Shown here: piece by piece, positions 17,614-61,746 of the stretch
Layout: every line of letters starts with the position of its first letter
Numbering within the stretch: position 1 is the first letter of the stretch
Virus record (IMG/VR): IMGVR_UViG_3300033049_000066
Location: 62,001-126,000 of that record
DNA: 64,000 bases
Direction: 5' to 3' (one strand)
The notes under the pieces: generated by a model
Databases searched by the model: none
What the model saw: only the letters and a program-made list of their open reading frames with translations
What the model was told of the DNA's origin: nothing
Program-made: the position numbers and the translations under genes

Positions 17614-17889
17614 GCTAACTCATTGATTTATATAAGGTTCTAGCATTTATTGAATCAGAGTAATATATTGGTAAGTTATTGATTTATATAAGAATACTGG
17701 TTCTTAGCGGCGTTTTTAAACGGCATTCACGTATCAGTACCAGTAAAACATAACAAAACAGCCCTAAAATAATCTAAAATAATTGCAAATAACCGCAAAT
17801 AGAGGTTGACCTTTGGCGCTAGTTGTCATATAATATATATAACAGTTAGGCAATGACGCTTTAACGCAACTTAAGAGATAAAGATTATG
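17614..17889 (+). repeat. dispersed non-coding repeat, copy 1 (two IHF-consensus sites plus early promoter)
   Basis: near-identical to 22866-23065 and 61473-61746; TTGACC(17806)-N17-TATAAT(17829). Confidence 0.9.
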
Positions 17890-18393
17890 ACTAAAATAGT
17901 AGACTATCGCATCACATCTTTCTTTAACCGTTATCATCAAAAGGTACTAAATAATCCGACATTGTACGTGTCGGGCGACTCAACCGTTAATGTCATACTA
18001 CCATCTGATTTGTTAGAGTATGCGAATGCAGCAGCTGGACATACTGGTTTTGGTTCTGGGGCAAGAGCTCGTGGTATTAGACAGCAGGTAAAAAATGCTA
18101 ACCTTGCCATTAAGGATATCTTCAATAGTATTGACAGTTTAATTACGTTTTTAGAATCTTCGGAATGCAACGCAGAAGCATATATTCAAGGGATAAAAGA
18201 AAAGCACCAAAGCGTTACTGTAAAAAATCAGTCGTTAGTTAGTGTTGACAATCGATCTGCCGATCAACATTTTAAATTGTTACATGCAAAGATTGATATT
18301 AACAGATTAGTGTTAAAATTCGGTTACGATGTAGTACTTGAGGCTCGAAAATTACTTACTATTAATGAATTTGAATTACGATTTGGAGTTTAG
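17887..18393 (+). CDS. hypothetical early protein
   Basis: first gene after the repeat promoter. Confidence 0.7.
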   Translation: MTKIVDYRITSFFNRYHQKVLNNPTLYVSGDSTVNVILPSDLLEYANAAAGHTGFGSGARARGIRQQVKNANLAIKDIFNSIDSLITFLESSECNAEAYIQGIKEKHQSVTVKNQSLVSVDNRSADQHFKLLHAKIDINRLVLKFGYDVVLEARKLLTINEFELRFGV

Positions 18394-18396
18394 ACA

Positions 18397-21300
18397 ATGT
18401 CGGTTAGGTATAAATTTAAGAGAATAATCTGGCTTTGTGATACAACAGATAAGAAACTTGCGACTGGTCAAGGTCTTCTTTACATGTGGCCTGATCCGAA
18501 TCCGTTAGTACCGCCGAAGTTCGGACTTATTAAGGCAAGTTCATATACTGGTGCAACGCCGGTCGAGGCATTCGAACGACGATATCCAAAATCATCCCAT
18601 AAAATTGATCAAGATAATATCGAACTTTTCGTGTATGAAATTGACGATAACAGGTTACACGATGATAAGATTAGAGCGGAGATCCACAAACGGTATATCC
18701 GTAACCCTGGGAGATTTCCGTTTGATGCTTATGATAAAGTTAATCATGTTGCACCGCAGGGTATTAATAACGAATCTTGCTTAGGTTATAATTACAATGA
18801 ACACAGCGGTGCCCTATTAGGATTAATCAAAGAATATTTCGGGATATTAGTAGTAGCAGACACGAGGGATCCGTGGATCCCTCGTGAAGCAGACCAAGAA
18901 AATACAGCAAAAGAAATCGCAAAAAAGTTAAAAACCAATGCACGGATTGCGTTAAACGGCCATACCGGATATGCGAAAATTATGATTACAATGGTCGCAA
19001 TACACCGGCATATATATCCATCAGATGGAGCATTTATTTTAGCAACTACGCCTGTAATTGACACGCTGTCGGGTATTATTTCGGATGCCACCGATTGGTA
19101 TTATGGTGGCAATCGGTGTAGACGAACTGTAGTCTATGACCGGGAGGCGCTAAATAATGGTAAAACCATTGCTGCAATGCGACAAGAAGCGGATAATGGC
19201 GACATAGTTTTCCTGAGCTTATCAGTTCAGGATATGCGATTTCAAGACAACGCATCATTGGTTATTGATGATAAAGAATTACGAGAAAAATACAAAGATT
19301 TAATTAGTGATGAGATTGAAATTGACCTATGGATAAGAGATGAAGCGCATTTTAACTATGCTGGCCTAGTAACCTCGAAGGTATTTGCTAGTTTGGATGA
19401 TCGGTGTCGATATATTATCGACACTAGCGCTAGCATTAACAAAATCGCTAACAATTACCACCCGGACTCAATAATAGACCGAGGCTTATTTTGGGCGCTT
19501 GCGCATGAAACAGAAAGGAAAACACCTCATATCCATATCGAGTCCCTTTCCGGAATGTGTTACGATACGCTAAGTCCCGACGTTCGTGAGGTATATAACG
19601 AAACCGAAGGATGGAGCCCATCAAAAATGACCGAACTTTTGCCGAACGGTCAGTTTAGAAGTTTAATCGCGATTAACTATATTTTAGAGAAACAGTATAT
19701 TTGCACCGATGAAAAGGAAGAAAATCCTTTGTCAATCATCAATGACATTGACTTACCGTATAAGTGTCGCCGCGTTGGCATGCATCTTTTTCCGGAGGGT
19801 GTCAACGGTACCCCTGCGAATATATACTTAAAAAAACTCGCAGATGATTTAAACGCAATGCCTCAATGGAGTCAGAAAGATGCATACGGGATAGCAAGGG
19901 CAATATTCATAACTCCTTATAATTTTAAAAAACATGCAGCAGCTCATACAAAGTCTAGCAACTCGTATCGCGATGTCATCGACTATCTCATGCAAACGTA
20001 TACTCATGTCGTTATTCTGACCCACAGGCGGTGGATCTTAGGTTCGAATATTCCGCCACTCGGACATGCAGTACAATGGGATAAAATTGTTGATCCATAC
20101 TGTCAAGAACAATTTGCCCCTGGAAGATTATTTAGAATCATGCCATGGAAAACTGCGATTAAGATATATGACCTGGCACCAGGCCACTATCTACAGAATT
20201 CAATATCGGAGATTGCGGCCAGCAGCAGTAAAATATTAAAGCAACCCGATGTTACGATCCTGTTACGTAATATTAGTTTTACAAGATATGAAAAAGGGAT
20301 CGGCATGAGATCTTGGACTCCGGAAGAGGTGTTTCGGCCATATAATAACATGCTTACTCGAAAATCCTTGTCGACGATTGGAGCCAGTATCTTAACAACA
20401 TTATCGTCCGTTGAGATTAATGCGTTGGCTTCGGCTTCATCTTCGTTAAAAAAGAACAAGGTGCTCGGAACAAACGAAAAAACTCAGCTTGTTGCTGAAA
20501 CCGGTACAGAGAAAGCTGCACCGAAGAACCAAAAAAGAAACAAGCAAGGCAAGGCGCCGGTTATGAATGACCGTAAAACATTAGATTTAATTAATAATAT
20601 ACTATTAGAAATCCCGTTTGTTGCTGTATCTACTAACATTTTGTTAATTGATGAAATATTAGATCATAGTATGATTCGGAGGATGTTTAATAGTATCATA
20701 GTTGACACTCTGCTAAATATCATAGCTAATAACCAAATTTTTAAACATGAATTACAGGATAAATTAACAGATATTCATTTAGCATTTGGGATATTGCCAT
20801 TTCTGGATATGCACGACGAGATATTTAAAAATACAACATTAAAAAAAGGTGAAGGCATTGTGTTTGTAAATTGCGAGGCCGCCGAATTTTTTGCAAATGA
20901 ATTTATTCGAGTATTTGCAATACCCAAACATACAACAGAAACAGTAGCAGTAGGAAACGCATTAAGTGGTAGTATACCGTTTTATTTGCAAAAACTGTTG
21001 CCTTGTGCTAATATAATATGTATTGAGAATAGTGATTACTATATTAGTCACTTAAAATCGTTGGGATTTACGTGTATAAAATACAACAACTTAAAGGAAA
21101 ACATGGTAAAAATTAAATACTGGGCCATTAACGCACCTTACCAAAAGGATGCGGGTGGTGTGAATGATAGCGGTAACAAACAGGGCAGCTATTGGTTTGC
21201 TTTCGTCGAAAAGATATTTGCGGTCGGACCCCCGGATGCGAAAATATTTAGTATCTCACCAAAGGCTATATTTGGAGCAGGCAATTATGGAAAATCAGCG

Positions 21301-21924
21301 TCAAAGGTAGCGAAAATATGCAATCATGGAAATTTTGTTCATATATGGCCGGACCTTGGGTCTCGGTTCCCTGGTGTAAGTATTCCAATTTGTGGATATG
21401 CAATAGATTTAGCAAAAACTACACCATATGCGACAGTTGATGGTTACGCTGACACCGATACGGTTATAATTAATAGCGATTACCCCGCCCCTTTTTATTT
21501 TTCTCCGGCTGCTGTTCGTATTATACAAAACTCATGGCAACAACACAAATCATTTGCGAATTTTGTAGAAAACTTGAACGCTAAGGACGACAATGTCGTC
21601 CTTAGAGTTAATGGTGGTCGTTTTAAACTCTGGAAGAAACTGTTTGTTGGGTTTGATCGAGATACCCAAAATAATCTTCAAGGAGCAGTAATCAACGATA
21701 ATGAACTCCCGGGGTATTTGTCAGCTAGTAAATGTAAACTATGGGAATATATCTTTAAAGTAATGGGTTGTGAAAAAGGTAATTCGGTTACTGGCGTATT
21801 CCAGCATTTACCAATAATGGACGATATGACCAGATCATATACTGATCAGGAATGGTTTTCTGCCTTTAACATCGATGAGCAAATGCAAAGAGAGATCGCA
21901 AAATTCCTACGTGAGGTCAAATGA
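18397..21924 (+). CDS. SF2 helicase-like / DNA adenine methyltransferase-like fusion (restriction-modification type)
   Basis: degenerate Walker A GHTGYAK, DEAH, GRLFR; C-terminal INAPYQ (NPPY-like) followed by a TRD-like region. Confidence 0.65.
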   Translation: MSVRYKFKRIIWLCDTTDKKLATGQGLLYMWPDPNPLVPPKFGLIKASSYTGATPVEAFERRYPKSSHKIDQDNIELFVYEIDDNRLHDDKIRAEIHKRYIRNPGRFPFDAYDKVNHVAPQGINNESCLGYNYNEHSGALLGLIKEYFGILVVADTRDPWIPREADQENTAKEIAKKLKTNARIALNGHTGYAKIMITMVAIHRHIYPSDGAFILATTPVIDTLSGIISDATDWYYGGNRCRRTVVYDREALNNGKTIAAMRQEADNGDIVFLSLSVQDMRFQDNASLVIDDKELREKYKDLISDEIEIDLWIRDEAHFNYAGLVTSKVFASLDDRCRYIIDTSASINKIANNYHPDSIIDRGLFWALAHETERKTPHIHIESLSGMCYDTLSPDVREVYNETEGWSPSKMTELLPNGQFRSLIAINYILEKQYICTDEKEENPLSIINDIDLPYKCRRVGMHLFPEGVNGTPANIYLKKLADDLNAMPQWSQKDAYGIARAIFITPYNFKKHAAAHTKSSNSYRDVIDYLMQTYTHVVILTHRRWILGSNIPPLGHAVQWDKIVDPYCQEQFAPGRLFRIMPWKTAIKIYDLAPGHYLQNSISEIAASSSKILKQPDVTILLRNISFTRYEKGIGMRSWTPEEVFRPYNNMLTRKSLSTIGASILTTLSSVEINALASASSSLKKNKVLGTNEKTQLVAETGTEKAAPKNQKRNKQGKAPVMNDRKTLDLINNILLEIPFVAVSTNILLIDEILDHSMIRRMFNSIIVDTLLNIIANNQIFKHELQDKLTDIHLAFGILPFLDMHDEIFKNTTLKKGEGIVFVNCEAAEFFANEFIRVFAIPKHTTETVAVGNALSGSIPFYLQKLLPCANIICIENSDYYISHLKSLGFTCIKYNNLKENMVKIKYWAINAPYQKDAGGVNDSGNKQGSYWFAFVEKIFAVGPPDAKIFSISPKAIFGAGNYGKSASKVAKICNHGNFVHIWPDLGSRFPGVSIPICGYAIDLAKTTPYATVDGYADTDTVIINSDYPAPFYFSPAAVRIIQNSWQQHKSFANFVENLNAKDDNVVLRVNGGRFKLWKKLFVGFDRDTQNNLQGAVINDNELPGYLSASKCKLWEYIFKVMGCEKGNSVTGVFQHLPIMDDMTRSYTDQEWFSAFNIDEQMQREIAKFLREVK

Positions 21925-22451
21925 TTGACAGCATTATTAAACATATTCGTGATCGACCGTATATGTCAGGAGTTAGTAGGGACAATGTTCGGGTGCGCTC
22001 AACGGCTGAAGTATTTACTAGAACAGATTTAGTTCTTGACTATATCAACTGGACTGATAAGAAATACCCCGATGCCTTTACAGATCCAAATAACAATTGG
22101 TGCGATAACTCAGCCGGCGATGGTCAATTATTGGGTGAGGTGCTAATCCGAAAAGTTGAACGAGCATTGGAGATAAGACAAATAACAAATTGCACAAAAG
22201 ACAGCATCGAAGGCTATGCAGCAATTTTTGAAAACGCTTTGCGTCATATATACGGTGTTGATAACCAACAATCTAATGTTGATTTATGTCGAGAGCGACT
22301 ACTATGTGGTCATGAAGAATTTAGGCACATTGTAGAAAATAATATAATCTGTGCCGACGCACTCGAATACGACTACAGCTTTGATGGGTCTTGGGAAAAG
22401 AAACAAGCCATGAATAAAAAGAAAGATGATCTATTTGATTTTGGTGACTAA
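21921..22451 (+). CDS. N6-adenine methyltransferase SAM-binding half
   Basis: TAEVFT, DNSAGDGQLL (motif I), IYGVD, NIICADAL; no NPPY motif. Confidence 0.75.
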   Translation: MIDSIIKHIRDRPYMSGVSRDNVRVRSTAEVFTRTDLVLDYINWTDKKYPDAFTDPNNNWCDNSAGDGQLLGEVLIRKVERALEIRQITNCTKDSIEGYAAIFENALRHIYGVDNQQSNVDLCRERLLCGHEEFRHIVENNIICADALEYDYSFDGSWEKKQAMNKKKDDLFDFGD

Positions 22452-22452
22452 C

Positions 22453-22818
22453 ATGAAAACCACTGAGATTACAAATTATTTTAGGTCAGATTTATTCGAA
22501 ATGTCAAATTTTCAGCCTACAACGACAGGGCTGTCTAGTGGTACTAAGCTGTGGGTCCGAGAAGAGCCGTACGGATTATCACATAACAAATACAGAATTA
22601 AAATTAGCAATCCACAAAAAGGCTCAGCAGTGTTCGCAATCTGGGGTGATGAACCAATCCAAGTCGCTGGAGATTGGGAAGTCCAGGGCAAAGATTTAAA
22701 AGAATTAAACACGTTAGTTCAAAGCACGTACCTTGATATTCGAAAACACATCAACGGAGAAATTGATTCTGCCGAGCTTGGATATGCGTTTAAAAATACA
22801 ATACGACCATCAAAATAA
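22453..22818 (+). CDS. hypothetical protein (possible internal head protein)
   Basis: MKTTEI...LFEMSN N-terminus. Confidence 0.6.
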   Translation: MKTTEITNYFRSDLFEMSNFQPTTTGLSSGTKLWVREEPYGLSHNKYRIKISNPQKGSAVFAIWGDEPIQVAGDWEVQGKDLKELNTLVQSTYLDIRKHINGEIDSAELGYAFKNTIRPSK

Positions 22819-22865
22819 CACGAATTTAAATACTAACAAACAACGAGATCAGTGATCGCAGTAAT

Positions 22866-23065
22866 GCTAACTCATTGATTTATATAAGGTTCTAGCATTT
22901 ATTGAATCAGAGTAATATATTGGTAAGCTATTGATTTATATAAGAATACTGGTTCTTAGCGGCGTTTTTGGCCGGCATTCACGTATCAGTACCAGTAAAC
23001 ATATCAAAACCGCCCTAAAATAATCGCAATTAGAGGTTGACCTTTGGCGCTAAATGTCGTATAAT
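22866..23065 (+). repeat. dispersed non-coding repeat, copy 2 with early promoter
   Basis: matches copy 1; TTGACC(23037)-N17-TATAAT(23060). Confidence 0.9.
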
Positions 23066-23103
23066 AGTTATACTATAAGCAATTAAGCAAAGGAAGAAAG
23101 ATC

Positions 23104-23481
23104 ATGAATACATTAAATATGAAGAATTTTAACAAATCACTTAAAATAGCAGCTGACCAGATGATTATGCGCAATTCAGCTATCGATTATGACGCTGATA
23201 CTGATCAGTCGGATCAGTATCAGACTGTAGCTAGTGTCTACATTGAGAAAGGATTGAGTAAAGATAATTTAAACGACTTACACATTTTTCGTGAAAAGAT
23301 GTATAAATTGCTTAAAAAGCGTTATAAAGTTAGCACAGACAGTATAACATCGTTTGCAGATCCAACAATAGCACTAAAAGCTAAAAAAGTGCCACAAAGA
23401 GCCCGAGTTATGCTGGGTATGATGGATATACTCATCGGTAAGCTAACACTAGCTGATGTACAGTTTGCTGAATTCGGTTAA
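23104..23481 (+). CDS. early protein, paralogue A
   Basis: shares KNF...DY.AD.D...KKVPQ.ARVMLG with 23593-23967. Confidence 0.75.
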   Translation: MNTLNMKNFNKSLKIAADQMIMRNSAIDYDADTDQSDQYQTVASVYIEKGLSKDNLNDLHIFREKMYKLLKKRYKVSTDSITSFADPTIALKAKKVPQRARVMLGMMDILIGKLTLADVQFAEFG

Positions 23482-23528
23482 ACTTAGCAAATAACCTCAT
23501 AATAATTAGCAATAAGGCCAATTAGCGG

Positions 23529-23557
23529 TTGACCTCTATAACTAAATGTCGTATAAT
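23529..23557 (+). promoter_or_regulatory. sigma70-like early promoter (duplicate of the 23037 promoter/leader)
   Basis: TTGACC-N17-TATAAT; leader matches 23066-23103. Confidence 0.8.
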
Positions 23558-23592
23558 AGTTACTATAAACAATTAAGCAATGGAAAAAGATC

Positions 23593-23967
23593 ATGGCTAA
23601 CCTCATAGTAAAGAACTTTGCAGAAACACTTAATCTCGCAGCAACTAGGATGATTTCAGTCGACCCGAGAGTTGACTACGGCGCAGATTCAGACGCGGAT
23701 GACCTCTACGGGGCAACAGTCCGGGCTTTCACAGATTCAGGTATTACTAAGGACGACCTTGAGAATTTACATACTGTAAAAGATGTCATTATGACAGCTC
23801 TCGCCAGCGCACATGAGGTCGACGCAAAACAGCTGGCCGCTAGTAGCAATAAACGAGATTTTTTAATATTTAAAAAAGTGCCTCAGACGGCACGGGTTAT
23901 GCTTGGTCTCATTGAGGTTATCATCTGTCAGGTGACAGTGGATTCTCATATGATTCAATTTGCATAA
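23593..23967 (+). CDS. early protein, paralogue B
   Basis: paralogue of 23104-23481. Confidence 0.75.
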   Translation: MANLIVKNFAETLNLAATRMISVDPRVDYGADSDADDLYGATVRAFTDSGITKDDLENLHTVKDVIMTALASAHEVDAKQLAASSNKRDFLIFKKVPQTARVMLGLIEVIICQVTVDSHMIQFA

Positions 23968-23995
23968 TCAATATTTTAACTACAAAGGAACCACC

Positions 23996-24193
23996 ATGAA
24001 ACGCACAGCAGAACACAGCGCAAAAATATCCAAGGCGTTAACCGGGCGCAAAATCTCAGCAGAGGCGAAACTTAATATGAGCCTAGCAAAGATGGGGCGA
24101 GCAAGAAAGCCATTTACAGCAGAACATCGTGCCAACATGCGACAAGCGCAGCAACGGCGCTGGGATCAGAAGCAAGCCCGAGAGGCGGTATAA
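23996..24193 (+). CDS. stand-alone NUMOD3-repeat DNA-binding protein
   Basis: three TAEH/SAEA-x-x-(K/N)-(I/M)-S-type motifs; AAGGA RBS; no nuclease domain. Confidence 0.65.
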   Translation: MKRTAEHSAKISKALTGRKISAEAKLNMSLAKMGRARKPFTAEHRANMRQAQQRRWDQKQAREAV

Positions 24194-24194
24194 A

Positions 24195-24479
24195 ATGTCA
24201 CCGCATCAAAATTCAATAAAAACAATTTTAATTCGCTTTGTGATAATGCTAATTTTCGTCATGCTAATTTTCGTCGGCATAACGTATTTTGGGCTTACGA
24301 CATTAGTACCAATGGTGCATCTGCAAGTACTTGACAATCAACAACAGCAGCTAGATACAAAGATAAAAGACTTGGAGTTTGATATTAAATGCGTTGAAGC
24401 CGGCAATCAACATATAGTTGTTGGTGACACTCATCTTTGTATGACACCCGATTCGCTCATTGATCATTATAAATCTTAA
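24195..24479 (+). CDS. membrane-anchored hypothetical protein
   Basis: N-terminal TM segment with 15-bp tandem duplication (MLIFV x2). Confidence 0.55.
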   Translation: MSPHQNSIKTILIRFVIMLIFVMLIFVGITYFGLTTLVPMVHLQVLDNQQQQLDTKIKDLEFDIKCVEAGNQHIVVGDTHLCMTPDSLIDHYKS

Positions 24480-24506
24480 CCGAACTAAAATTTGGAATTA
24501 TAACTT

Positions 24507-25672: not shown

Positions 25673-27931
25673 ATGCAAATCAATCCAGAAATCGAGCAGA
25701 TAACCGACTACGCAATTGCTCTCGCAAAACGGCAGCATCAGGAATATGTATTAGTTGAACATTTGCTGGTCGCATTAATAAGTTACGAACCATTTTACAA
25801 TTGTTTAAAAGGTTACGGTGTTAATATCGACGCAATGGTGAATGACATTGAGCTGTACCTGCATAATTTACCGGCAGCTCCGAGCACTGTCGAAAAGCCA
25901 AAACGAACTAACAGCATAGAGCGAGTGTTCAACCGTGCTGTAACGCAGGTTATATTTAGTGGTCGGCGCTTTGTTACTACAATTGATTTATTCTTGGCGA
26001 TCTCGTCTGAGGCAAGCAGCCACGCATCATATTTTATTTTAAAATATGGCGTTGATGACAAGGAGGCGATCGCATCGTACTGGAATGATAACTACAGCGA
26101 TATCGGTGGGAAGATGAGCGATACGCAATCAGACGAGGTGCTTGAAGAACATTGCACAAACGTATCGGCCAAGGCAGCAGCAGGTGAGCTCGAGCCGCTT
26201 ATTGGGCGAGAGGCCGAAGTGAAGGACGCGATAGAAATCCTCGCTAAGAAATTTAAGTCCAATGTGCTGATGGTCGGGGAGCCAGGTGTAGGCAAAACCG
26301 TCATCTTAGAAGGGCTCGCACAGAAAATCAACGCCGACGAAGTGCCGACGTTCATGAAGGGACACACCGTCTGGGAGCTCAACATCGGTGACATGCTCGC
26401 TGGCAGCAAGTACCGAGGAGAATTTGAAGAGAAATTTAAGAAAGTGATCAAGGCCTTGGAAGCGTCGGGCAAGGGTATACTTTTTATCGACGAAGCTCAC
26501 ACTATGAAGGGTGCTGGCAGCGGCGCAGGATCATCGTTGGATTTCGCGAACATGCTGAAGCCGGTGATCACACGCGGCAAGATCAAGGTCGTCGCCTGCA
26601 CCACCTGGGACGAATACTACGAATCCTTCGAGAAAGATAAGGCATTGATGCGCAGATTTTACAAACTAATTGTCGACGAACCAGATCACGACACCACAGT
26701 GAAGATTTTAACGGGCGTGGCGAAACGTCTGTCAGCATATCACAATGTGAAAATCGACCCGAGTGCTATCGCGTCAACCGTGGACTTGAGTACTCGCTAC
26801 ATTCACGACAGATTCAACCCAGACAAATCAATCGACATCTTAGACGCGGCCTGCGCTAAGGAACGTGCGAGTGACAACCACGACACGCTAATTAAAACTG
26901 AACATATCATTCAGCAACTAAGCAAAGTCACCGGCGTACCTACAGAACGTCTAAGCAATGAAAAAAGCAAGACACTATTGACACTGCGTGGCAATATCGA
27001 CAGCAAATTATTCGGCCAAGAAGATGCGGTGGAAGAAGTACTTAATAAAATTTACATCAACTTTGGTGGATTAGCCGAAGAAAATAAACCAGTCGCAAGC
27101 TTCTTGTTTCTTGGGCCAACCGGCACAGGTAAAACCGAGCTAGCTAAGCTAATCAGTGAAAACTTAGACATGGAACTATTACGTTACGATATGTCCGAGT
27201 ACATGGAAAAACATACAGTGGCATCACTTATTGGTGCGCCACCGGGTTATGTCGGCTACGAAGAGTCAGGTGGTGGTGGCAAGCTAATCTCAGATATTAG
27301 CAAACATCCATTCTCTGTACTGTTACTTGACGAAGTTGAGAAAGCTCACCCTGACGTGTTCAACGTGCTGCTGCAGGTCCTGGACGAAGGTAAGATTACT
27401 AGTCGCAGCGGAAAATCAGTGTCACTGCGAAATACAATCGTCATCATGACGTCAAATCTTGGCGCAGCTGACAATGAGAAAAATAACATTGGTTTCACAG
27501 ACCTGGCCCGCAGCGGCGAAGAAGATAAAGCAGTTAAAGAATTCTTTAAACCTGAGTTCCGCAACAGACTTGACGGTATTGCTAAGTTCAAGAAACTTGA
27601 AGATATAAATGTGAAGAAAATTGTTGTCAAGTTCATAAACGAACTAAAAGTCAGCTTGAAATCTAAGGGGATTGCATTCAACGCAACAGAGGCGGCCATC
27701 AATCATATTGCTGATACTGGTTACGATTCAGCACTTGGAGCACGGCCAATTAAACGACAGATCTCAGATGTGTTTAAACAGCCACTAAGTAAACGAATAT
27801 TATTTGAAGAATTAAGCAATTGCACAATTACCGCAGATTATGTCGACGGAGAAATTGTATTTACTGACACATGCGTTCCGGTAATCCCAGAGCTAAATCC
27901 CGAACCACATATTTTAACCCAAGATATTTAA
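25673..27931 (+). CDS. clpA: ClpA-type AAA+ chaperone/protease ATPase
   Basis: Clp N-domain, GEPGVGKT/FIDEAH, GPTGTGKT/LDEVEKAH, FKPEFRNRLD; 752 aa, no ClpB middle domain. Confidence 0.92.
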   Translation: MQINPEIEQITDYAIALAKRQHQEYVLVEHLLVALISYEPFYNCLKGYGVNIDAMVNDIELYLHNLPAAPSTVEKPKRTNSIERVFNRAVTQVIFSGRRFVTTIDLFLAISSEASSHASYFILKYGVDDKEAIASYWNDNYSDIGGKMSDTQSDEVLEEHCTNVSAKAAAGELEPLIGREAEVKDAIEILAKKFKSNVLMVGEPGVGKTVILEGLAQKINADEVPTFMKGHTVWELNIGDMLAGSKYRGEFEEKFKKVIKALEASGKGILFIDEAHTMKGAGSGAGSSLDFANMLKPVITRGKIKVVACTTWDEYYESFEKDKALMRRFYKLIVDEPDHDTTVKILTGVAKRLSAYHNVKIDPSAIASTVDLSTRYIHDRFNPDKSIDILDAACAKERASDNHDTLIKTEHIIQQLSKVTGVPTERLSNEKSKTLLTLRGNIDSKLFGQEDAVEEVLNKIYINFGGLAEENKPVASFLFLGPTGTGKTELAKLISENLDMELLRYDMSEYMEKHTVASLIGAPPGYVGYEESGGGGKLISDISKHPFSVLLLDEVEKAHPDVFNVLLQVLDEGKITSRSGKSVSLRNTIVIMTSNLGAADNEKNNIGFTDLARSGEEDKAVKEFFKPEFRNRLDGIAKFKKLEDINVKKIVVKFINELKVSLKSKGIAFNATEAAINHIADTGYDSALGARPIKRQISDVFKQPLSKRILFEELSNCTITADYVDGEIVFTDTCVPVIPELNPEPHILTQDI

Positions 27932-36030: not shown

Positions 36031-37635
36031 ATGAAATTACACGAAATGTTCAACGGTGACGTCAAAGAAAACAAAGAAGCCGACGTTAAGCCAACGTACC
36101 TACAAGATGAAATCCTCGAACGTTTAAAGGCGTCAGGTGGTAGCGTGTACACAGGTAACGCAAGATTGGTAAAAGACGGCGTTACAGCGATCCTAGCAAT
36201 CAACGGTCAACGCAGATTCGCAATCTTCCCAGATGGCACGTACAAAGCAAGTAAAAAATTCATTGACTTTCAACGTGATGGTTGGGAATTAGAAATTGCT
36301 AACTTTGAAAGCGTAGAAGAAGCCAAAGGAAAAAGTCCAAAGTCTGATATTCGTGTAGACAATGCCGGTAACAAGAAATGGTACAAAGATGGTGAATTAC
36401 ACAGAGAAGACGGACCAGCAATTGAGTTCGCGGATGGTGACCGGTGGTGGTACAAGAACGGTAAACAGCACCGAGATGATGGGCCAGCTGTTGAACAGGT
36501 AAATTCCACAAAGGGCTGGTACATAAATGGTAAGTTACACAGAGAAGATGGCCCAGCAATTGAATACGAAAATGGTGATCAATATTGGTACATAAATGGC
36601 AAATTACATAGAGAAGATGGCCCGGCTGTTGAACGTGCGGATGGCAGTAAAGAGTGGTACTTAAATGGCGTAAAACAAGAACCTAACGTTTCAGAAGAAA
36701 GAGAAGTGCGCACTGGCGTAGAAGAAGCCAAAGGAAAAAGTCCAAAGTCTGATATTCGTGTAGACAAAGATGGTAACAAAAGATGGTACGTAAATGGCGT
36801 ATTACATCGAGAAGATGGCCCTGCTATTGAACTCGCAGTTGGCTCCAAATTTTGGTTCATAAATGGCAAAAGACACAGAGAAGATGGCCCTGCTATTGAA
36901 CTCGCGAATGGCGACCGCCATTGGTACAAAAACGGCAAAAGACACAGAGATGATGGGCCGGCTATTGAGTACGCGGAAGGTGACCGCCATTGGTACATAA
37001 ATGGTGAAAGACACAAAGAAGATGGGCCAGCTGCAGAACAAGCAAATGGCTCCAAATTTTGGTTCGTACATGGCAAAAAACACAGAGAAGATGGCCCTGC
37101 TATTGAACTCGCAGATGGTGAAAAACAGTGGTTCATAAATGACAAAAAACACAGAGAAGATGGGCCAGCCGTTATACAAAAAGCCGGCTCCAAATTTTGG
37201 TACATAAATGGCGTAAAACAAGAACGTAACGTCTCTGAAGAAATAGTTCCTTACACTAAAAATGGTGATACCGATCAAGGCGAATATATTGATGATGAAA
37301 CTGGTCAAATATATGACCAAAATGAAATTGAGACAGTACACGGCAAGAATCGAGAAAAACAACACCACGCTATTAATAACTCAAATCGATCCGAAGATGA
37401 TTACGTGGCCGAGCCTGAAGTTACTCCGAAAAATCCCTTAGCCGTTAGCATGTTTGGCGATATCGCAGCAGGTGGTGGTGATCCAATTGATCATTTAATG
37501 ACCTCACATAACATGACGATGGATCAGGTTGATGCACTAGCACGTGAGCAAGGGTATACTGATGCTTATGAATGGGCAGAAAGTTTTATTGAAATGGAAT
37601 CAATTCTTAGGAACGCAGGTATTCAAAAATCATGA
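36031..37635 (+). CDS. HREDGPA-repeat (MORN-like) protein
   Basis: ten 23-aa WxxNGxxHREDGPA repeats in two blocks; leader MKLHEMF. Confidence 0.8.
   Translation: MKLHEMFNGDVKENKEADVKPTYLQDEILERLKASGGSVYTGNARLVKDGVTAILAINGQRRFAIFPDGTYKASKKFIDFQRDGWELEIANFESVEEAKGKSPKSDIRVDNAGNKKWYKDGELHREDGPAIEFADGDRWWYKNGKQHRDDGPAVEQVNSTKGWYINGKLHREDGPAIEYENGDQYWYINGKLHREDGPAVERADGSKEWYLNGVKQEPNVSEEREVRTGVEEAKGKSPKSDIRVDKDGNKRWYVNGVLHREDGPAIELAVGSKFWFINGKRHREDGPAIELANGDRHWYKNGKRHRDDGPAIEYAEGDRHWYINGERHKEDGPAAEQANGSKFWFVHGKKHREDGPAIELADGEKQWFINDKKHREDGPAVIQKAGSKFWYINGVKQERNVSEEIVPYTKNGDTDQGEYIDDETGQIYDQNEIETVHGKNREKQHHAINNSNRSEDDYVAEPEVTPKNPLAVSMFGDIAAGGGDPIDHLMTSHNMTMDQVDALAREQGYTDAYEWAESFIEMESILRNAGIQKS
36311..37242 (+). 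repeat. duplicated repeat cassettes made of 69-bp coding repeats (4 + 6 units)
   Basis: identical 52 bp at 36311-36362 and 36716-36767; both blocks end in NGVKQExNVSEE. Confidence 0.9.
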
Positions 37636-52658: not shown

Positions 52659-52732
52659 GTCTGCGTAGCTAAGAGGCCTAGCAAGGGATTTTAAATCTCT
52701 GCACGTGGGTTCGACCCCCACCGCAGGCACCA
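52659..52732 (+). tRNA. tRNA with UUA anticodon (ochre-suppressor type), CCA encoded
   Basis: acceptor GTCTGCG/CGCAGGC, D-arm GCT/AGC, anticodon stem AGGGA/TCTCT with loop TTTTAAA, T-arm GTGGG-TTCGACC-CCCAC, ACCA end. Confidence 0.85.
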
Positions 52733-54960: not shown

Positions 54961-55052
54961 ATTAACTATAGTCCACAAAGAATATCCACAGTAACAACTA
55001 CTTAGAATGAATTATTAACATTCATTACGGCTCATTGATTTAAAAATAGAGG

Positions 55053-55081
55053 TTGACAGAACTAATATAATATCGTATAAT
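55053..55081 (+). promoter_or_regulatory. sigma70-like early promoter
   Basis: AGAGG-TTGACA-N17-TATAAT; same AGAGGTTGAC context as the repeat promoters. Confidence 0.8.
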
Positions 55082-55102
55082 ATAACCATAGGAGAATTTT
55101 TA

Positions 55103-55624
55103 ATGAATAAAACTTATTTAAATTACAATGACGTGGAAGCGCATTGTCTAGAAATCGCACAAAATATTTCGCGTGACGATTGGCACCCGGATTATATCAT
55201 CGGCTTGACCCGTGGTGGGCTGCTACCGGCAACGCTGCTAAGTCATCGACTAAACGTGCCGATGTCCTCACTGGATGTAAGTTTGCGTGATGGCGGCATG
55301 GAATCGTGTAGTAATTGCTGGATGGCCGAAGACGCGTTCAATGGAAAAAATTTACTAATTGTCGACGATATAAATGATACAGGTGCGACACTACAGTGGA
55401 TTGTAGATGACTGGATGTCGAGCAATTTGCCCAACGATCCCAAATGGGGGACGATTTTTGGTGACAACGCTCGCTTCGCCACTATTGTAAATAATGCCGG
55501 TAGTGATTTTAAAAACGTTTCCTACAGTGGGCTACAAATTAATAAAGATGAAGATGATTCCTGGATTGTTTTTCCGTGGGAGGAGTGGCAGCCAGCAATA
55601 GGAGAGAAAGATGGCGAAGATTAA
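55103..55624 (+). CDS. type I phosphoribosyltransferase (xanthine/guanine PRT-like)
   Basis: IIGLTRGGLLPA, LLIVDDINDTGATL, WIVFPWE. Confidence 0.9.
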   Translation: MNKTYLNYNDVEAHCLEIAQNISRDDWHPDYIIGLTRGGLLPATLLSHRLNVPMSSLDVSLRDGGMESCSNCWMAEDAFNGKNLLIVDDINDTGATLQWIVDDWMSSNLPNDPKWGTIFGDNARFATIVNNAGSDFKNVSYSGLQINKDEDDSWIVFPWEEWQPAIGEKDGED

Positions 55625-58151: not shown

Positions 58152-58161
58152 AGGAGCAACC

Positions 58162-58551
58162 ATGTCCCGAAAACTAACTATGTCGTGTCGATCATTTTAT
58201 GATTTAAAGAACAAAATCGATGCAATAAAAGGGGTTCGCACAGTTACAAACTCATCCCTAAGAGAAGCAAAAGCTCTAGTTGAAGGTATTACACCTGGAC
58301 ACAGCGAAACATTGCACGTCACCCACAAATTACTCGGTCACGATTTTTCAGAGGGGGTGCGATTAATTAAAGCTAGTGGATTAACTGTACAAGTTAGTCG
58401 TATTGAACCAGCTGACGAGATTGTTCGAGGTGATATAGCAGACCAGATACGACAGATAATAACGTTCGCGACAATGGCGGCGCAATACGACATTAGCAAA
58501 TCATTGCTAGATGTTTTGGAAACACACTGCACGGTACATATAGAAGAATAA
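58162..58551 (+). CDS. protein with a ribosomal bL12 (L7/L12) C-terminal-like domain
   Basis: KIDAIKGVRTVTNSSLREAKALVEG resembles bL12 KIxVIKxVRxxTGLGLKEAKxLVE. Confidence 0.65.
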   Translation: MSRKLTMSCRSFYDLKNKIDAIKGVRTVTNSSLREAKALVEGITPGHSETLHVTHKLLGHDFSEGVRLIKASGLTVQVSRIEPADEIVRGDIADQIRQIITFATMAAQYDISKSLLDVLETHCTVHIEE

Positions 58552-58563
58552 ACGGAGAAAATA

Positions 58564-58920
58564 ATGGATGAAAACGTACGATTTGAAAAAACTGAATGGG
58601 CAGATGACGAGGCGGCAATAGCTAATAGTCAAGCTGCTAATTTAGAGAAGAAACATGCCCGTGGCACCTCACATCGCGATGTGAACACGAAGGAAGTTAG
58701 TGATGGTAGCTCAGCGGACTATTACATCCTCCCGGCTGGTGCTAAGCAGCTTCAAGATTTAATTAGTCATCGCAACATGAATTCGCAAATTGGGGAAATC
58801 TTTAGAGAAAGTTATCGTTACGGTCTAGCAGCACATTGCGATCAAATGCGTGGCGCGAAGAAAATACAATTTTACATAAAGGCGGAAATTGCGCGCCTTG
58901 AGAAACTAGGATTACAATGA
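58564..58920 (+). CDS. DUF3310-like phage protein
   Basis: GSSADYY...LQDLI...GEIF...YRYG...AKKIQFY pattern. Confidence 0.5.
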   Translation: MDENVRFEKTEWADDEAAIANSQAANLEKKHARGTSHRDVNTKEVSDGSSADYYILPAGAKQLQDLISHRNMNSQIGEIFRESYRYGLAAHCDQMRGAKKIQFYIKAEIARLEKLGLQ

Positions 58921-59987: not shown

Positions 59988-60424
59988 TAAAAAACAAGTT
60001 CTGGATCCTTCAACAAAACAATGTTAAGGTAGGACAGGCTAAACGAACCAACAAAAATATTGAAATTCGCATATACGGTTCTCCAGTTGGCAGGTACGCA
60101 AATTTTGCTGAGATGAAAAAGTCTGGCTTGTTTGAATTTACAGAACTGCCAAAGGCGGACGCTACCCCTAGCGAAGATGTACACGGGTACCCTATCGCGG
60201 GGATTGCGTACAACGCGGTATGGAATGTAAAATATAAACTGCCGTTGTATACGCAATCCTCGGACAGCAAATCATGGTTCGCTGCCGGCTATTATAAAGT
60301 TAATATAAATGGGATCTGGATAGTTCAATTATGCCCAAAACTTATATCATTGCAACGAAACACATACGAAGGACCATTCCGGACAAGCCCTGGGCTCAAT
60401 CAGTACAACGAGATATTTGAATGA
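59951..60424 (+). CDS. hypothetical protein
   Basis: ORF overlapping the end of rnh; start uncertain. Confidence 0.6.
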   Translation: MEDIQKIRAKSVIKNKFWILQQNNVKVGQAKRTNKNIEIRIYGSPVGRYANFAEMKKSGLFEFTELPKADATPSEDVHGYPIAGIAYNAVWNVKYKLPLYTQSSDSKSWFAAGYYKVNINGIWIVQLCPKLISLQRNTYEGPFRTSPGLNQYNEIFE

Positions 60425-60588
60425 GTGACGATGAGCTATTAGTACTAATAAAATACGGCACCAAGGGTACTGCTATATTTCAGTGGTGGGGCAGAACCCC
60501 CACCACTGAAGACCAATGGGAACTCGCAATAGTAAAGCATTGGCAGTACGTAGCACATCTAACACGTCAAGGGAGAACAAAGGAATGA
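60421..60588 (+). CDS. small hypothetical protein (55 aa, not in the ORF track)
   Basis: ATGA overlaps at both ends. Confidence 0.45.
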   Translation: MSDDELLVLIKYGTKGTAIFQWWGRTPTTEDQWELAIVKHWQYVAHLTRQGRTKE

Positions 60589-60806
60589 GCGGATTACATA
60601 TTTCACGATTTATTGATAAGATAAAGATGTTTGAGGCGAAAAACGCAAAAACATTCACTATGTCAATTCGCGACGCGAAAGATCTACATGCTGATATAAC
60701 AAAACTGCTAATTGGACTCCAGGTATTACAAGCTGTAAAACCTAAGGTTGAACCCGACGAAGTGCAACAGATTGAAATATCTGGTGGTGGCTTTATTGAT
60801 AAATAA
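60585..60806 (+). CDS. hypothetical protein
   Basis: MSGLHISRFIDKI...IEISGGGF. Confidence 0.6.
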   Translation: MSGLHISRFIDKIKMFEAKNAKTFTMSIRDAKDLHADITKLLIGLQVLQAVKPKVEPDEVQQIEISGGGFIDK

Positions 60807-60841
60807 TGTACGTACATTATATACCCACAGAGGAATCAATA

Positions 60842-61129
60842 ATGGCAAGACCGAAACCTAAAATTATAGCTGAGGTAACAAACAAAGCAACATACAAAAC
60901 CGACCAAATACTAGCAAGTGATGGAGTATGGGCGGTTTATTTCCAAAACCGGGCAATTAACATAAAGACGCAAAATATGCTAGTTCAGTACCCCGGCCCC
61001 AAGTATAAGAAAGTATCCTTTAGCAACAAAGGTCACGCAATTAACCTAGCTAAGAAGCTCAATCGACAATTTAAATCCGACGAGTTCACAGTTATGTTTT
61101 TATCCGAGGGCGAGCAGGTTTATCCGTAA
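60842..61129 (+). CDS. hypothetical basic protein
   Basis: GAGG RBS, MARPKPK. Confidence 0.65.
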   Translation: MARPKPKIIAEVTNKATYKTDQILASDGVWAVYFQNRAINIKTQNMLVQYPGPKYKKVSFSNKGHAINLAKKLNRQFKSDEFTVMFLSEGEQVYP

Positions 61130-61470
61130 TGGATAAACGTACCATCACTGAAGAAGTTTTAAAGGAGATAGATTCTCAGTACGATTTAGAATCAGCGCTA
61201 AAATCTTGGTGGTGGTTCAGCTACAGCAACGTCAATTCTGTCAGATTAACAAAAGCCGGTCATGCCGCAATTAATCAGGTTATGAAACCTTTTGTCTTTG
61301 ATTGTACGCTAAACAACACTGGCACCGGCATAAAGCAACTAATTAAGCTAGGCACTCCATTCTATGCTGATTTTCAAAATCAGCAAATCACTATATATAG
61401 TGCAAAATTAGCAACAATGATAAAAATATATCCGAGCTTTAATAGATACATTGAAATAATAAACAAATAA
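61129..61470 (+). CDS. hypothetical protein
   Basis: 113 aa, translationally coupled. Confidence 0.6.
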   Translation: MDKRTITEEVLKEIDSQYDLESALKSWWWFSYSNVNSVRLTKAGHAAINQVMKPFVFDCTLNNTGTGIKQLIKLGTPFYADFQNQQITIYSAKLATMIKIYPSFNRYIEIINK

Positions 61471-61472
61471 TG

Positions 61473-61746
61473 TAAGTCATTGATTTATATAAGGTTCTAG
61501 CATTTATTAAATCAGAGTAATATATTGGTAAGTTATTGATTTATATAAGAATACTGGTTTTTAGCGGCGTTTTTGGCCGGCATTCACGTAGCAGTACCAG
61601 CAAAACATAACAAAAGAGCCCTTAAATAATCTAAAATAATCTTAAATATCTGCAATTAGAGGTTGACCTTTAGAGTTAGATGTCATATAATGTATATAAC
61701 AGTTAGGCAATGACGCTTTAACGCAAATTAAGAGATAAAGATTATG
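61473..61746 (+). repeat. dispersed non-coding repeat, copy 3 with early promoter
   Basis: matches copy 1 through to the ATG; TTGACC(61663)-N17-TATAAT(61686). Confidence 0.9.

What the first reader, a model, noticed from the sequence alone, without database searches (positions are those of the whole stretch)
17614..61746. Three copies of a 200-275 bp non-coding element with paired IHF sites feeding a strong early promoter
Seen: near-identical copies at 17614, 22866 and 61473. Each has two matches to the IHF consensus WATCAANNNNTTR on the minus strand (for example 17616-17628 and 17672-17684, 56 bp apart, within a repeated ATTGATTTATATAAG), then AGAGGTTGACC-N17-TATAAT. Copies 1 and 3 also share the leader up to the ATG, while copy 2 switches to the leader shared with 23529. 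A remnant precedes the 55053 promoter. Known: promoter-containing repeats in T4-type phages can shuffle early gene cassettes. Inference: a portable IHF-bent promoter or recombination module, or an origin-like element.
Basis: partly seen in the sequence, partly recalled or inferred. Interest (0 to 1): 0.7.

Follow-up and report, generated by a model that had tools for sequence, protein, structure and literature searches.

The report
IHF-box early-promoter cassettes in a jumbo phage
The three repeats are recent copies of a promoter cassette that occurs about 40 times in a 293-kb marine jumbo phage; its upstream 13-bp box, most likely a binding site for the host DNA-bending protein IHF, keeps to one face of the helix relative to early promoters across a whole clade of uncultured phages.

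Summary
The window lies in a 293-kb marine T4-related jumbo phage. That genome holds about 40 homogenised sigma70-type early promoters (AGAGGTTGAC-N17-TATAAT plus a shared leader).

- **Long form.** Ten promoters carry the roughly 190-bp upstream module with two boxes 56 bp apart.
- **The box.** The 13-bp core TAAGTCATTGATT reads AATCAATGACTTA on the other strand, which fits WATCAANNNNTTR.
  - It also occurs singly or inverted upstream of other early promoters.
  - It is found in more than 130 distinct contexts in uncultured phages, at three distances from the promoter about 10.5 bp apart.
  - In bacteria, box pairs sit between DnaA boxes, inside iteron arrays, and beside guaA with repeated arm-like motifs. 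The first two are classical IHF contexts, so host IHF is the likeliest binder.
- **Age of the copies.** Three diverged long modules are ancestral and syntenic in a relative with 61% amino-acid identity. Seven near-identical copies, including all three in the window, are a recent burst. The window copies border genes absent from that relative.
- **Recombination.** The copies are mosaics of one another, and one strain carries a different gene after a family promoter.

Best reading: a PeSL-like early-promoter cassette without the stem-loop, activated through a phased IHF bend and also serving as recombination homology. An origin role for the three ancestral modules is not excluded. Binding and transcription are untested.

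The parts
17616..17886 (+). Copy 1, long-form cassette: box 1 at 17616-17628, box 2 at 17672-17684, conserved middle block, 10-bp A-tract units at about 17766-17805, -35 at 17806-17811, -10 at 17829-17834, and leader up to the ATG at 17887
22868..23103 (+). Copy 2, long-form cassette: boxes at 22868-22880 and 22924-22936, about 21 bp fewer A-tract bases, -35 at 23037-23042, -10 at 23060-23065. From the promoter spacer onward it has the promoter and leader type of the 23529 promoter. ATG at 23104
61473..61743 (+). Copy 3, long-form cassette: boxes at 61473-61485 and 61529-61541, -35 at 61663-61668, -10 at 61686-61691, and the same long leader as copy 1. ATG at 61744. Box 1 starts 3 nt after the stop codon of the upstream gene
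23511..23592 (+). Promoter-only family member (-35 at 23529-23534, -10 at 23552-23557) in front of a paralogue (23593-23967) of the gene behind copy 2. This is a tandem duplication of promoter plus gene
   Evidence: (D3, D8)
55031..55102 (+). Family promoter with a half box (CTCATTGATTT, 55031-55041) 11 nt upstream of the -35 hexamer (55053-55058); -10 at 55076-55081; ATG at 55103
63401..63470 (+). Further family-type promoter (AATAGGTTGACA-N17-TATAAT, -35 at 63413) without a box, in front of a SWIM zinc-finger gene
17887..24479 (+). Genes behind copies 1 and 2 (168, 1175, 176, 130, 125, 124 and 116 aa). None has a homologue in the closest large relative G006, so this is a lineage-specific (hyperplastic) stretch bracketed by the cassettes

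Best explanation
The element is the long form of a dispersed early-promoter cassette of a marine T4-related jumbo phage.

**Composition.** The core is a near-consensus sigma70 promoter with an A-tract upstream region and a shared leader and ribosome-binding site. It is presumably read by host RNA polymerase right after infection. Upstream lie one to three copies of a 13-bp box, TAAGTCATTGATT.

**Proposed mechanism.** The box is most likely a high-affinity site for the host DNA-bending protein IHF. It holds defined helical registers relative to the promoter in either orientation. The inferred mechanism is architectural activation: a protein-induced bend, helped by the curved A-tract DNA, brings upstream DNA or the protein onto RNA polymerase. 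This would resemble what I recall (not checked here) of IHF-stimulated sigma70 promoters such as lambda pL and Mu Pe.

**History.** The two-box long module is old: three copies are syntenic in a relative with 61% amino-acid identity. In this phage it was recently copied to seven more places by homologous recombination between promoter cassettes. The cassettes therefore also act as portable homology that moves and swaps early gene cassettes, as PeSLs do in T4-like phages.

**Shown versus inferred.**
- Shown: anatomy, copy census, conservation, phasing, mosaicism and strain and relative differences.
- Inferred: IHF as the binder, activation as the effect, and early timing.
For: **Census.** There are 10 long copies and about 40 family promoters. 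Assembly depth over the element is 10-12 times that of unique sequence.

**Not an RNA or a gene.** Fold z-scores are -0.3 and +0.6, there is no Rfam match, and there is no usable ORF.

**Box and promoter go together.**
- All 29 box matches within 1 mismatch lie upstream of a promoter of this type: 27 within 260 bp of a listed family promoter, 2 at the variant promoter at genome 2377.
- 29 of the 58 IHF-consensus matches in the genome lie in the 3.8% of sequence upstream of these promoters.

**Conservation.**
- The relative G006 (MCP 89%; 234 shared proteins at a mean 61% identity) has 26 exact boxes.
- It has three long modules with the same Box1-56 bp-Box2 plan at syntenic places, although the spacer sequences are unrelated.

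**Phasing.**
- In dereplicated IMG/VR and genome data, the box-to-promoter gaps cluster at 15, 25 and 36 bp for direct boxes, and at 13 and 22-28 bp for inverted boxes.
- The Rayleigh statistic is R = 0.76-0.78 at a 10.5-11 bp period (p about 1e-11) for direct boxes, and p about 0.002 for inverted boxes.

**IHF as the binder.**
- The minus strand fits WATCAANNNNTTR.
- Excluding reverse-strand self-matches of the near-palindrome, variation among boxes falls mainly in box positions 4-7, which are the NNNN of the consensus.
- Tandem boxes occur in 13-14 Porticoccaceae/SAR92 genomes between DnaA boxes, inside iteron arrays of many bacteria and phages, and just after guaA next to repeated arm-like motifs.

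**Recombination.**
- 330 of 595 site pairs are four-gamete incompatible.
- Copy 2 is a chimera.
- The first gene behind a family promoter is conserved in G006 in 13 of 34 cases, against 242 of 418 genome-wide (p = 0.018).
- A 99.7-99.8% identical strain contig diverges from this genome exactly in the leader after promoter 270286(-). It continues into a helicase-like gene that is absent from run X1 (phage depth about 350-400x) and present in X2 at about 12x.

**Host polymerase.** The cultured relative PA5oct depends on host RNA polymerase and has TTGAC/TATAATA promoters (PMC7318152).
Against: - No binding, transcription or timing data exist. No RNA run was listed and the IHF-DNA complex job was not folded.
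- The host is unknown, so its IHF is assumed.
- The four 'free' positions are largely conserved (GTCA) across diverged phages. The box is a near-palindrome (TAAnTCAnTGAnTTA). Tandem boxes only 25-26 bp apart could not all hold IHF at once. These three points would also fit a dedicated dimeric regulator.
- In the window copies the boxes start about 113-134 and 169-190 bp upstream of the -35 hexamer. I believe this is farther than typical IHF-activated sigma70 promoters.
- Cultured relatives and two uncultured ones lack the box, so it is not needed by this type of phage in general.
- The strain difference rests on one contig end. Public assemblies break at the repeat, so the junction itself is not bridged.
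Confidence: 0.6

Rival explanations
1. The box is the operator of a dedicated sequence-specific dimeric regulator, phage-encoded or a host factor other than IHF, that activates or times a subset of early promoters. On this view the fit to the IHF consensus is coincidental.
For: - The box is a 15-bp near-palindrome.
- The 'N' positions are largely conserved between G000 and G006 while the flanks are randomised.
- Tandem arrays occur at 25-26 bp and 34-38 bp spacing; from memory, this resembles cooperative operator arrays.
- With the palindrome centre taken as reference, direct and inverted boxes share positions near -59 and -69.
- Cultured relatives that infect hosts I take to have IHF (Vibrio, Pseudomonas, E. 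coli, Sinorhizobium) lack the box.
Against: - The same 13-mer in tandem occurs in bacterial chromosomes of many phyla, at DnaA-box clusters, in iteron arrays and beside guaA, and in phage contigs of 28-65% GC. That calls for a very widespread binder.
- Variation is asymmetric: the left half varies while TTGATT does not. This is unlike a symmetric dimer site.
- The one conserved DNA-binding gene next to an ancestral module, a 76-aa winged helix, does not co-occur with the box.
Confidence: 0.17
2. The long modules, at least the three ancestral ones, are replication origins: IHF-site arrays plus AT-rich DNA next to a promoter that supplies the primer or activating transcript, as in T4-type origins. 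The seven recent copies are then by-products of promoter recombination.
For: - Exactly three long modules are syntenic between G000 and G006, spaced about 83-110 kb apart around the genome.
- They carry extra conserved motifs (AATAGTGG, AAAACCGCC) unrelated to the promoter.
- Elsewhere, tandem boxes lie mostly in origin-like settings: DnaA-box clusters and iteron arrays.
- A further conserved box pair lies between the uvsY-like gene and the AAA-ATPase and uvsW-like genes. From memory, T4 ori(uvsY) lies in the corresponding region.
Against: - Single boxes at phased positions upstream of many promoters point to transcription.
- No initiator gene is linked to the modules. Flanking genes are small and poorly conserved.
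- GC skew shows no origin signal.
- Ten copies in G000, seven of them recent, is an odd number for origins.
- No downstream unwinding element was identified.
Confidence: 0.15
3. The cassette is a selfish mobile element whose defined left end, the box, is the site of a site-specific recombination system (integron-like or att-like) that inserts box-to-box gene cassettes.
For: - Homology begins exactly at the first base of the box in more than 12 independent junctions.
- Next to guaA in bacteria, the boxes lie among repeated arm-like motifs. From memory, guaA is a known insertion site for integrative elements.
- The cassettes border lineage-specific genes.
Against: - There are no terminal inverted repeats or target duplications.
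- Right-hand ends are variable and lie within promoter or leader homology.
- The observed crossovers (copy 2, the strain contig) lie in the promoter or leader, not at the box.
- No recombinase gene was noticed next to the cassettes. This was not searched systematically.
- A sharp left edge is equally expected if the box is simply the first selected part.
Confidence: 0.06

Closest known systems
PeSLs (promoter-early stem-loops) of T4-like phages (Arbiol et al. 2010, PMC2839356; Comeau et al. 2014, PMC4122927)
   Same: - Repeated intergenic cassettes made of an AT-rich region, a sigma70-like early promoter, a Shine-Dalgarno site and the ATG.
- Concentrated next to small ORFan genes that differ between close relatives.
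- Crossovers mapped between the -10 and the ATG or within the promoter.
- Each phage lineage has its own homogenised version.
   Different: - The stem-loop terminator that defines PeSLs is mostly absent here: 5 of 40 promoters have one, and 9% of boxes lie in hairpin loops.
- In its place is a conserved 13-bp protein-site-like box, often in arrays, kept in helical phase with the promoter.
- The long form is about 190 bp upstream of the promoter and conserved across genera.
- The phage belongs to the RaK2/PA5oct-type jumbo group, not to the classical T4-like phages.
- Mini-circles could not be tested.
IHF-stimulated sigma70 phage promoters (lambda pL with upstream IHF sites and a distal UP element; Mu Pe) - from my own knowledge, not checked here
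   Same: Strong early phage promoters read by host polymerase, with one or two IHF-consensus sites and A/T-rich DNA upstream. Dependence on the face of the helix is expected for a bend that delivers upstream DNA to the polymerase.
   Different: - Here the arrangement is multiplied about 20-fold within one genome and conserved over a clade.
- Boxes occur in both orientations and in arrays of up to three or four.
- In the long form they lie much farther upstream, starting about 113-209 bp from the -35 hexamer.
IHF sites in replication origins and DnaA-box clusters (E. coli oriC, datA, DARS2; pSC101 and R6K origins) and in att sites of integrative elements - from my own knowledge
   Same: The identical 13-mer, in pairs, was found here between DnaA boxes in Porticoccaceae/SAR92 genomes, within iteron arrays, and next to guaA.
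   Different: In the phage, the boxes are tied to promoters, with no DnaA boxes, iterons of a Rep protein or integrase arm sites around them.
T4 replication origins oriF (uvsY) and oriG (gene 34): promoter plus downstream unwinding element - from my own knowledge
   Same: Origin function there depends on a promoter. There are a few copies per genome, and one conserved box cluster here lies next to the uvsY-like gene.
   Different: T4 origins use MotA-dependent middle promoters and a downstream unwinding element. No IHF arrays are described for them, and nothing here shows initiation.

Membership tests
PeSL regulatory cassettes | Near-consensus sigma70-type early promoter (-35, 17-bp spacer, -10) | tested here: met
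   About 40 promoters match AGAGG-TTGAC[C/A/T]-N17-TATAAT
PeSL regulatory cassettes | AT-rich region directly upstream of the -35 | tested here: met
   10-bp A-tract units (CTAAAATAAT and variants) occur 1-5 times. Predicted curvature lies in the genome's 95th-99th percentile
PeSL regulatory cassettes | Stem-loop terminator just upstream of the promoter | tested here: not met
   A terminator-like hairpin was found upstream of 5 of 40 promoters, about 2 of them convincing. Only 12 of 134 unique boxes lie in hairpin loops of 5 bp or more
PeSL regulatory cassettes | Conserved Shine-Dalgarno site and start codon at the 3' end | tested here: met
   A shared leader (ACAGTTAGATAA..GAGCAAAGG..ATG) occurs in most family members
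PeSL regulatory cassettes | Sits in variable regions next to genes that differ between close relatives | tested here: met
   Downstream genes are conserved in G006 in 13 of 34 cases against 242 of 418 genome-wide (p = 0.018). Window 17.9-24.5 kb is absent from G006. A strain contig diverges in the leader
PeSL regulatory cassettes | Recombination between cassettes gives excised mini-circles | not testable with these tools
   Only assembled contigs of two runs were available, and they break at the repeat
IHF binding site | Match to WATCAANNNNTTR | tested here: met
   The minus strand reads AATCAATGACTTA, with all 9 specified positions matched. Apart from reverse-strand self-matches of the near-palindrome, variants differ mainly in the NNNN positions
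IHF binding site | A/T-rich tract on the 5' side of the core | tested here: inconclusive
   Distal boxes are followed by TATATAAG/TATATAG on the correct side. Proximal boxes vary (CTTGGG, AATTCATT, TTTTGCTA)
IHF binding site | Occurs where IHF sites are known to act (origins, DnaA-box clusters, att sites) | tested here: met
   Tandem boxes lie between DnaA boxes in 13-14 Porticoccaceae/SAR92 genomes, in iteron arrays, and after guaA among repeated arm-like motifs
IHF binding site | Bound and bent by IHF; effect lost in ihf mutants | not testable with these tools
   The complex prediction job was not folded. The host is unknown and no IHF/HU gene is in the phage
T4-type or iteron-type replication origin | Promoter with an adjacent unwinding element, or iterons next to a cognate initiator gene; initiation mapped there | tested here: inconclusive
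   A promoter and AT-rich DNA are present, and three ancestral modules are syntenic. No linked initiator gene was found and there is no skew signal. Initiation cannot be tested here

The most novel reading that the evidence does not exclude
The three ancestral long modules (box - 56 bp - box - conserved motifs - box - promoter) are IHF-assisted, transcription-primed replication origins of a large clade of uncultured T4-related jumbo phages. This phage has recently copied such an origin-promoter unit to seven new places, so that each new gene cassette arrives with both an early promoter and a potential initiation site.
Probability: 0.15. Interest if true: 0.75.

Novelty: new variant of a known kind. 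Interest (0 to 1): 0.47.

Why it matters
- **A testable early-transcription signal.** It gives a sequence-defined handle on early transcription in a large group of uncultured marine jumbo phages: a 13-bp box in fixed helical registers upstream of host-type promoters. It suggests these phages recruit a host architectural protein to drive their first genes.
- **A wider reach for regulatory-cassette shuffling.** This mode of genome change was described for classical T4-like phages. It appears here in the RaK2/PA5oct-type jumbo group, in a variant where a protein site replaces the stem-loop. The data include a datable burst (3 old copies, 7 new) and a strain-level gene swap.
- **Practical uses.**
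  - The box and promoter pattern can be used to find early regions in metagenomic jumbo-phage contigs.
  - The exact match to the box pair between DnaA boxes in SAR92/Porticoccaceae genomes is a weak lead to the host.

Tried and rejected
- **Structured RNA.** Fold z-scores were -0.3 and +0.6 and no Rfam family matched. Rejected.
- **Small ORF in the element.** All frames contain stops, apart from a 58-aa minus-strand ORF over the promoter and the start of the next gene that I judged spurious. Rejected.
- **Extra sigma70 promoter or terminator inside the module.** None was found.
- **T4-type late promoter.** TATAAATA exists elsewhere in the genome in front of ATGs, but the box is not one.
- **Phage-encoded HU/IHF.** No PF00216 match in the genome.
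- **DNA similarity in cultured phages.** None.
- **Relatives G001 and G003.** They lack the element and the box.
- **Cultured relatives.** Vibrio phage 2.275.O, PA5oct, Phosso and Turkey5 show no box enrichment.
- **Promoter-only pattern scan of IMG/VR.** Swamped by chance hits.
- **Metagenome contig scan with the long box pattern.** No hit.
- **Reads.** Only Logan contigs of two seawater runs were served. They break at the repeats, so neither a circle nor a deletion between copies 1 and 2 could be tested. No RNA run was listed.
- **IHF plus box complex prediction.** The job was not folded and gave no verdict, so it is no evidence either way.
- **GC skew as an origin signal.** It is dominated by transcription direction and uninformative.
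- **Box as the conserved loop of a terminator hairpin.** True for about 9% of boxes only.
- **76-aa winged-helix gene beside one ancestral module as the binder.** It does not co-occur with the box.
- **FNR-like reading (TTGAT-N4-ATCAA).** The second half-site is not conserved. This rests on inspection.
- **Literature search for the 13-mer.** The exact 13-mer occurs in no held paper, and the listed hits to its 10-nt fragments were unrelated.


Full report
**1. The observation**

The three copies are present at window 17616, 22868 and 61473.
- Each begins sharply with a 21-bp repeat unit that recurs 56 bp downstream.
- Next comes a conserved block of about 55 bp, then a run of 10-bp A-tract units, then AGAGGTTGACC-N17-TATAAT, then a leader up to the ATG.
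- The 21-mer occurs six times in the window and never in 100 shuffles.
- Copies 1 and 3 are 91% identical and share the leader.
- Copy 2 lacks about 21 bp of the A-tract units. Within the promoter spacer it switches to the sequence of the neighbouring promoter at 23529, which drives a paralogue of the gene behind copy 2.
- A half box precedes the promoter at 55053.

**2. Genome context**

- The window is bases 62001-126000 of a 293,278-bp IMG/VR virus record with 41.6% GC.
- The two ends of the record overlap in a coding tandem repeat, so the genome is probably closed.
- It comes from seawater metagenomes, where it reaches about 350x assembly depth in one run.
- Its T4-type major capsid protein is 65-66% identical to those of Vibrio phage 2.275.O and Pseudomonas phage PA5oct.
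- PA5oct relies on host RNA polymerase and has TTGAC/TATAATA promoters (PMC7318152).
- The genome also holds T4-like TATAAATA motifs correctly placed before several ATGs. The box is therefore not the late promoter.

**3. Census in the genome**

- BLAST finds ten long copies, at genome 56845, 60825, 79616, 84866, 123473, 161440, 184150, 203686 (partial), 269191(-) and 271242(-). It also finds about twenty promoter-only copies.
- A pattern scan gives 40 promoters with the extended -35 context, most followed after 22-47 nt by a small gene.
- Assembly depth over the element is 10-12 times that of unique sequence, which agrees with this count.
- Genes behind the long copies are mostly ORFans. Exceptions are an HD phosphohydrolase and short repeat-containing proteins with weak DUF6745 matches; an HhH-GPD glycosylase-like gene is the third gene behind copy 3.

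**4. What the upstream module is not**

- It has no usable ORF; the only one listed is a 58-aa minus-strand ORF over the promoter and gene start that I judged spurious.
- It has no fold better than shuffled sequence, no Rfam match, and no further promoter or terminator.
- Only 5 of 40 promoters have a terminator-like hairpin upstream.

**5. The box**

- The part shared by all versions is the 13-mer TAAGTCATTGATT.
- Besides the paired distal boxes, it occurs singly 29-43 bp (box start) upstream of the -35 hexamer in nine other promoters.
- It occurs inverted upstream of three promoters, at genome 2291/2353, 195197/195240 and 271074.
- All 29 box matches within 1 mismatch lie upstream of a promoter of this type.
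  - 27 lie within 260 bp of a listed family promoter.
  - The other 2 lie at the variant promoter at genome 2377.
- Half of the genome's 58 IHF-consensus matches lie in the 3.8% of sequence upstream of these promoters.
- Its reverse complement, AATCAATGACTTA, matches WATCAANNNNTTR at all nine specified positions.
- Among box variants in this genome and in its relative G006, and setting aside reverse-strand self-matches of the near-palindrome, differences fall mainly in positions 4-7, the four unspecified ones. TAA and TTGATT hardly vary.

**6. Relatives**

- Two relatives with capsid identity of 81-83% lack both the element and the box and have their own promoter families.
- This genome has about 1048 internal repeat matches, against 26 and 46 in those two.
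- A closer relative is G006 (IMGVR_UViG_3300032254_000001, 344 kb, terminal repeats). It shares 234 proteins at a mean 61% identity and has capsid identity of 89%.
- G006 has 26 exact boxes and three long modules: Box1, 56 bp, Box2 followed by AATAGTGG, a block ending in AAAACCGCC, then Box3 14-26 bp before AAAGGTTGACC-N17-TATAAT.
- The 56-bp spacers are unrelated in sequence, yet the spacing is exact.
- These three modules are syntenic with the three diverged copies of this genome (60825, 161440, 271242).
- The seven near-identical copies, including all three in the window, have no long module at the matching places in G006.
- The window copies, and most of the others, lie beside genes that G006 lacks. 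The whole stretch at window 17.9-24.5 kb is absent there.
- Genome-wide, the first gene behind a family promoter is conserved in G006 in 13 of 34 cases, against 242 of 418 for all genes (p = 0.018).
- So three modules are old and under selection, and seven are a recent burst associated with new genes.

**7. The clade and the phasing**

- Collection scans found the box next to AGGTTGAC promoters in many IMG/VR contigs (53, 56 and 30 stretches for three gap or orientation classes).
- Most of these contigs encode proteins 40-65% identical to this phage's.
- After removing near-duplicates, the gap between box and promoter clusters at 15, 25 and 36 bp for direct boxes, and at 13 and 22-28 bp for inverted ones.
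- The Rayleigh statistic is 0.76-0.78 at a period of 10.5-11 bp (p about 1e-11) for direct boxes, with p about 0.002 for inverted boxes. Periods of 7-8 bp show nothing.
- The box therefore has to face the promoter from one side of the helix, whichever way it points. This is the signature of a DNA-bound protein that bends DNA toward, or touches, the polymerase.
- The phase relation fits a reference point at the palindrome centre (box position 8). It fits equally a point just beyond position 13, which is where I recall the IHF dyad to lie.
- The phasing therefore cannot tell these two binders apart.

**8. Who binds**

Points for a dedicated dimeric regulator:
- The box is a near-palindrome.
- The middle positions are largely conserved.
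- Tandem boxes are common (at least 120 stretches), with favoured spacings of 25-29, 34-38, 42, 48-54, 56 and 64 bp. At 25-26 bp, two IHF dimers could not both bind.

Points for IHF:
- Carriers range from 28 to 65% GC.
- A scan of one genome per bacterial species found tandem boxes in 59 stretches.
  - 13-14 are in Porticoccaceae/SAR92/HTCC2207 genomes, at one locus where the pair, 30 bp apart, lies between DnaA boxes.
  - Many others lie inside iteron arrays.
  - Six lie right after the stop codon of guaA, among repeated arm-like motifs. From memory, guaA is a known insertion site for integrative elements.
- Origins and DnaA-box clusters are the classical places for IHF sites. So are att sites, if that is what the guaA-adjacent loci are.
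- No phage-encoded HU/IHF was found.
- The only conserved DNA-binding gene next to an ancestral module does not co-occur with the box.

I put IHF at roughly two in three, and another specific binder at about one in five.

**9. Recombination**

- Among the seven recent copies, 330 of 595 pairs of informative sites show all four combinations, so the copies are mosaics.
- The number of 10-bp A-tract units differs between copies in whole units.
- Copy 2 is a chimera with its crossover in the spacer.
- Fragments of the same phage from other samples are 99.99-100% identical (L031, L037).
- One fragment, L025, is 99.7-99.8% identical but diverges from this genome exactly in the leader after the promoter at 270286(-).
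  - It continues into a helicase-like gene found nowhere in this genome.
  - That gene is absent from run X1, where the phage is at 350-400x, and present at about 12x in run X2, where the phage is at 10-20x.
  - This looks like a real strain difference at a family promoter. The junction itself is not bridged by independent data, so a chimeric contig is not excluded.

**10. Comparison with known systems**

- The cassette behaves like the PeSLs of T4-like phages (PMC2839356, PMC4122927). Shared features are the early promoter, the AT-rich region, the shared ribosome site, the location next to variable ORFans, and crossovers within the cassette.
- It fails the defining stem-loop test. It adds a conserved, phased protein-site box and a long form conserved across genera.
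- I therefore file it as a new variant that works like a PeSL, not as a member.
- The origin reading is kept as a rival for the three ancestral modules. They are few, syntenic and roughly evenly spaced, and carry extra conserved motifs.
- A fourth conserved box pair lies beside the uvsY-like gene.
- Nothing here shows initiation, and GC skew is uninformative.

**11. Verdict**

- IHF is supported by comparison only.
- The origin idea remains open, but only for the three older copies outside the window.

Noticed in passing
window 52659-52732 (+): ARAGORN calls a tRNA with anticodon TTA, which would read the UAA stop codon: a possible suppressor tRNA gene in the phage.
   Followed up: no
window 36379-37221 (+): A tandem repeat with a 69-bp period lies inside the 534-aa ORF at 36031-37635 (repeat finder D1). 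Repeated segments also occur within the 1186-aa ORF at 4355-7915 (D4-D6, D10).
   Followed up: no
G000 genome 142268, 142360, 142614 (locus L272): Three family promoters in a row are followed by no ORF, or by only a doubtful 30-aa one more than 120 nt downstream. They may drive small RNAs or tRNAs.
   Followed up: no
G000 genome 1-60 and 293220-293278: The two ends of the record overlap within a coding tandem repeat (an Ala/Pro/Glu-rich repeat). The record classed as 'linear, 83% complete' is therefore probably a closed genome.
   Followed up: partly
G000 genome 276257-276672 versus L025 7528-7904: A gene that by eye carries GIY-YIG homing-endonuclease motifs has a strongly diverged allele in the otherwise 99.7-99.8% identical strain contig.
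   Followed up: partly
L025 1-1487 (-), contig IMGVR_UViG_3300033048_000030: A helicase-like gene (protein P0001) follows a family promoter in one strain. It is absent from this genome and from run X1, and present in run X2 at about 12x.
   Followed up: partly
L573 1087-1129 and 12-13 other Porticoccaceae/SAR92 loci (L548-L602): Two exact boxes 30 bp apart lie between DnaA boxes (TTTTCCACAG upstream; TCCACAAAGTTATCCACAG downstream) at one conserved chromosomal locus. This is an oriC-like or datA/DARS-like site. It may hint at the host group of this marine phage.
   Followed up: partly
L557, L575, L582, L598, L603, L605: In several Beta- and other Proteobacteria, a box pair lies right after the stop codon of guaA (GMP synthase) among repeated GTTACACA/GCTACACA motifs. 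It looks like the arm of an integrative element's att site.
   Followed up: partly
G000 genome 2260-2440 (locus L545): An inverted, diverged pair of boxes (62 bp apart) plus a variant promoter lies between a UvsY-like gene and an AAA-ATPase gene, near UvsX- and UvsW-like genes. G006 has the homologous box cluster at 207408. Homologues of these flanking genes recur in 6-7 tandem-box IMG/VR loci; adjacency to the boxes was not checked.
   Followed up: partly
window 25673-27931 (+) and G000 genome 59795-60382: The phage encodes a ClpA/ClpB-type double AAA+ ATPase (752 aa) and, elsewhere, a ClpP-type protease.
   Followed up: no
G000 genome 203600-203660: In the partial copy at 203686, the degenerate first box lies in the loop of a 12-bp-stem terminator hairpin followed by a T-run. 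G006 has the matching hairpin with an exact box at 331113.
   Followed up: partly
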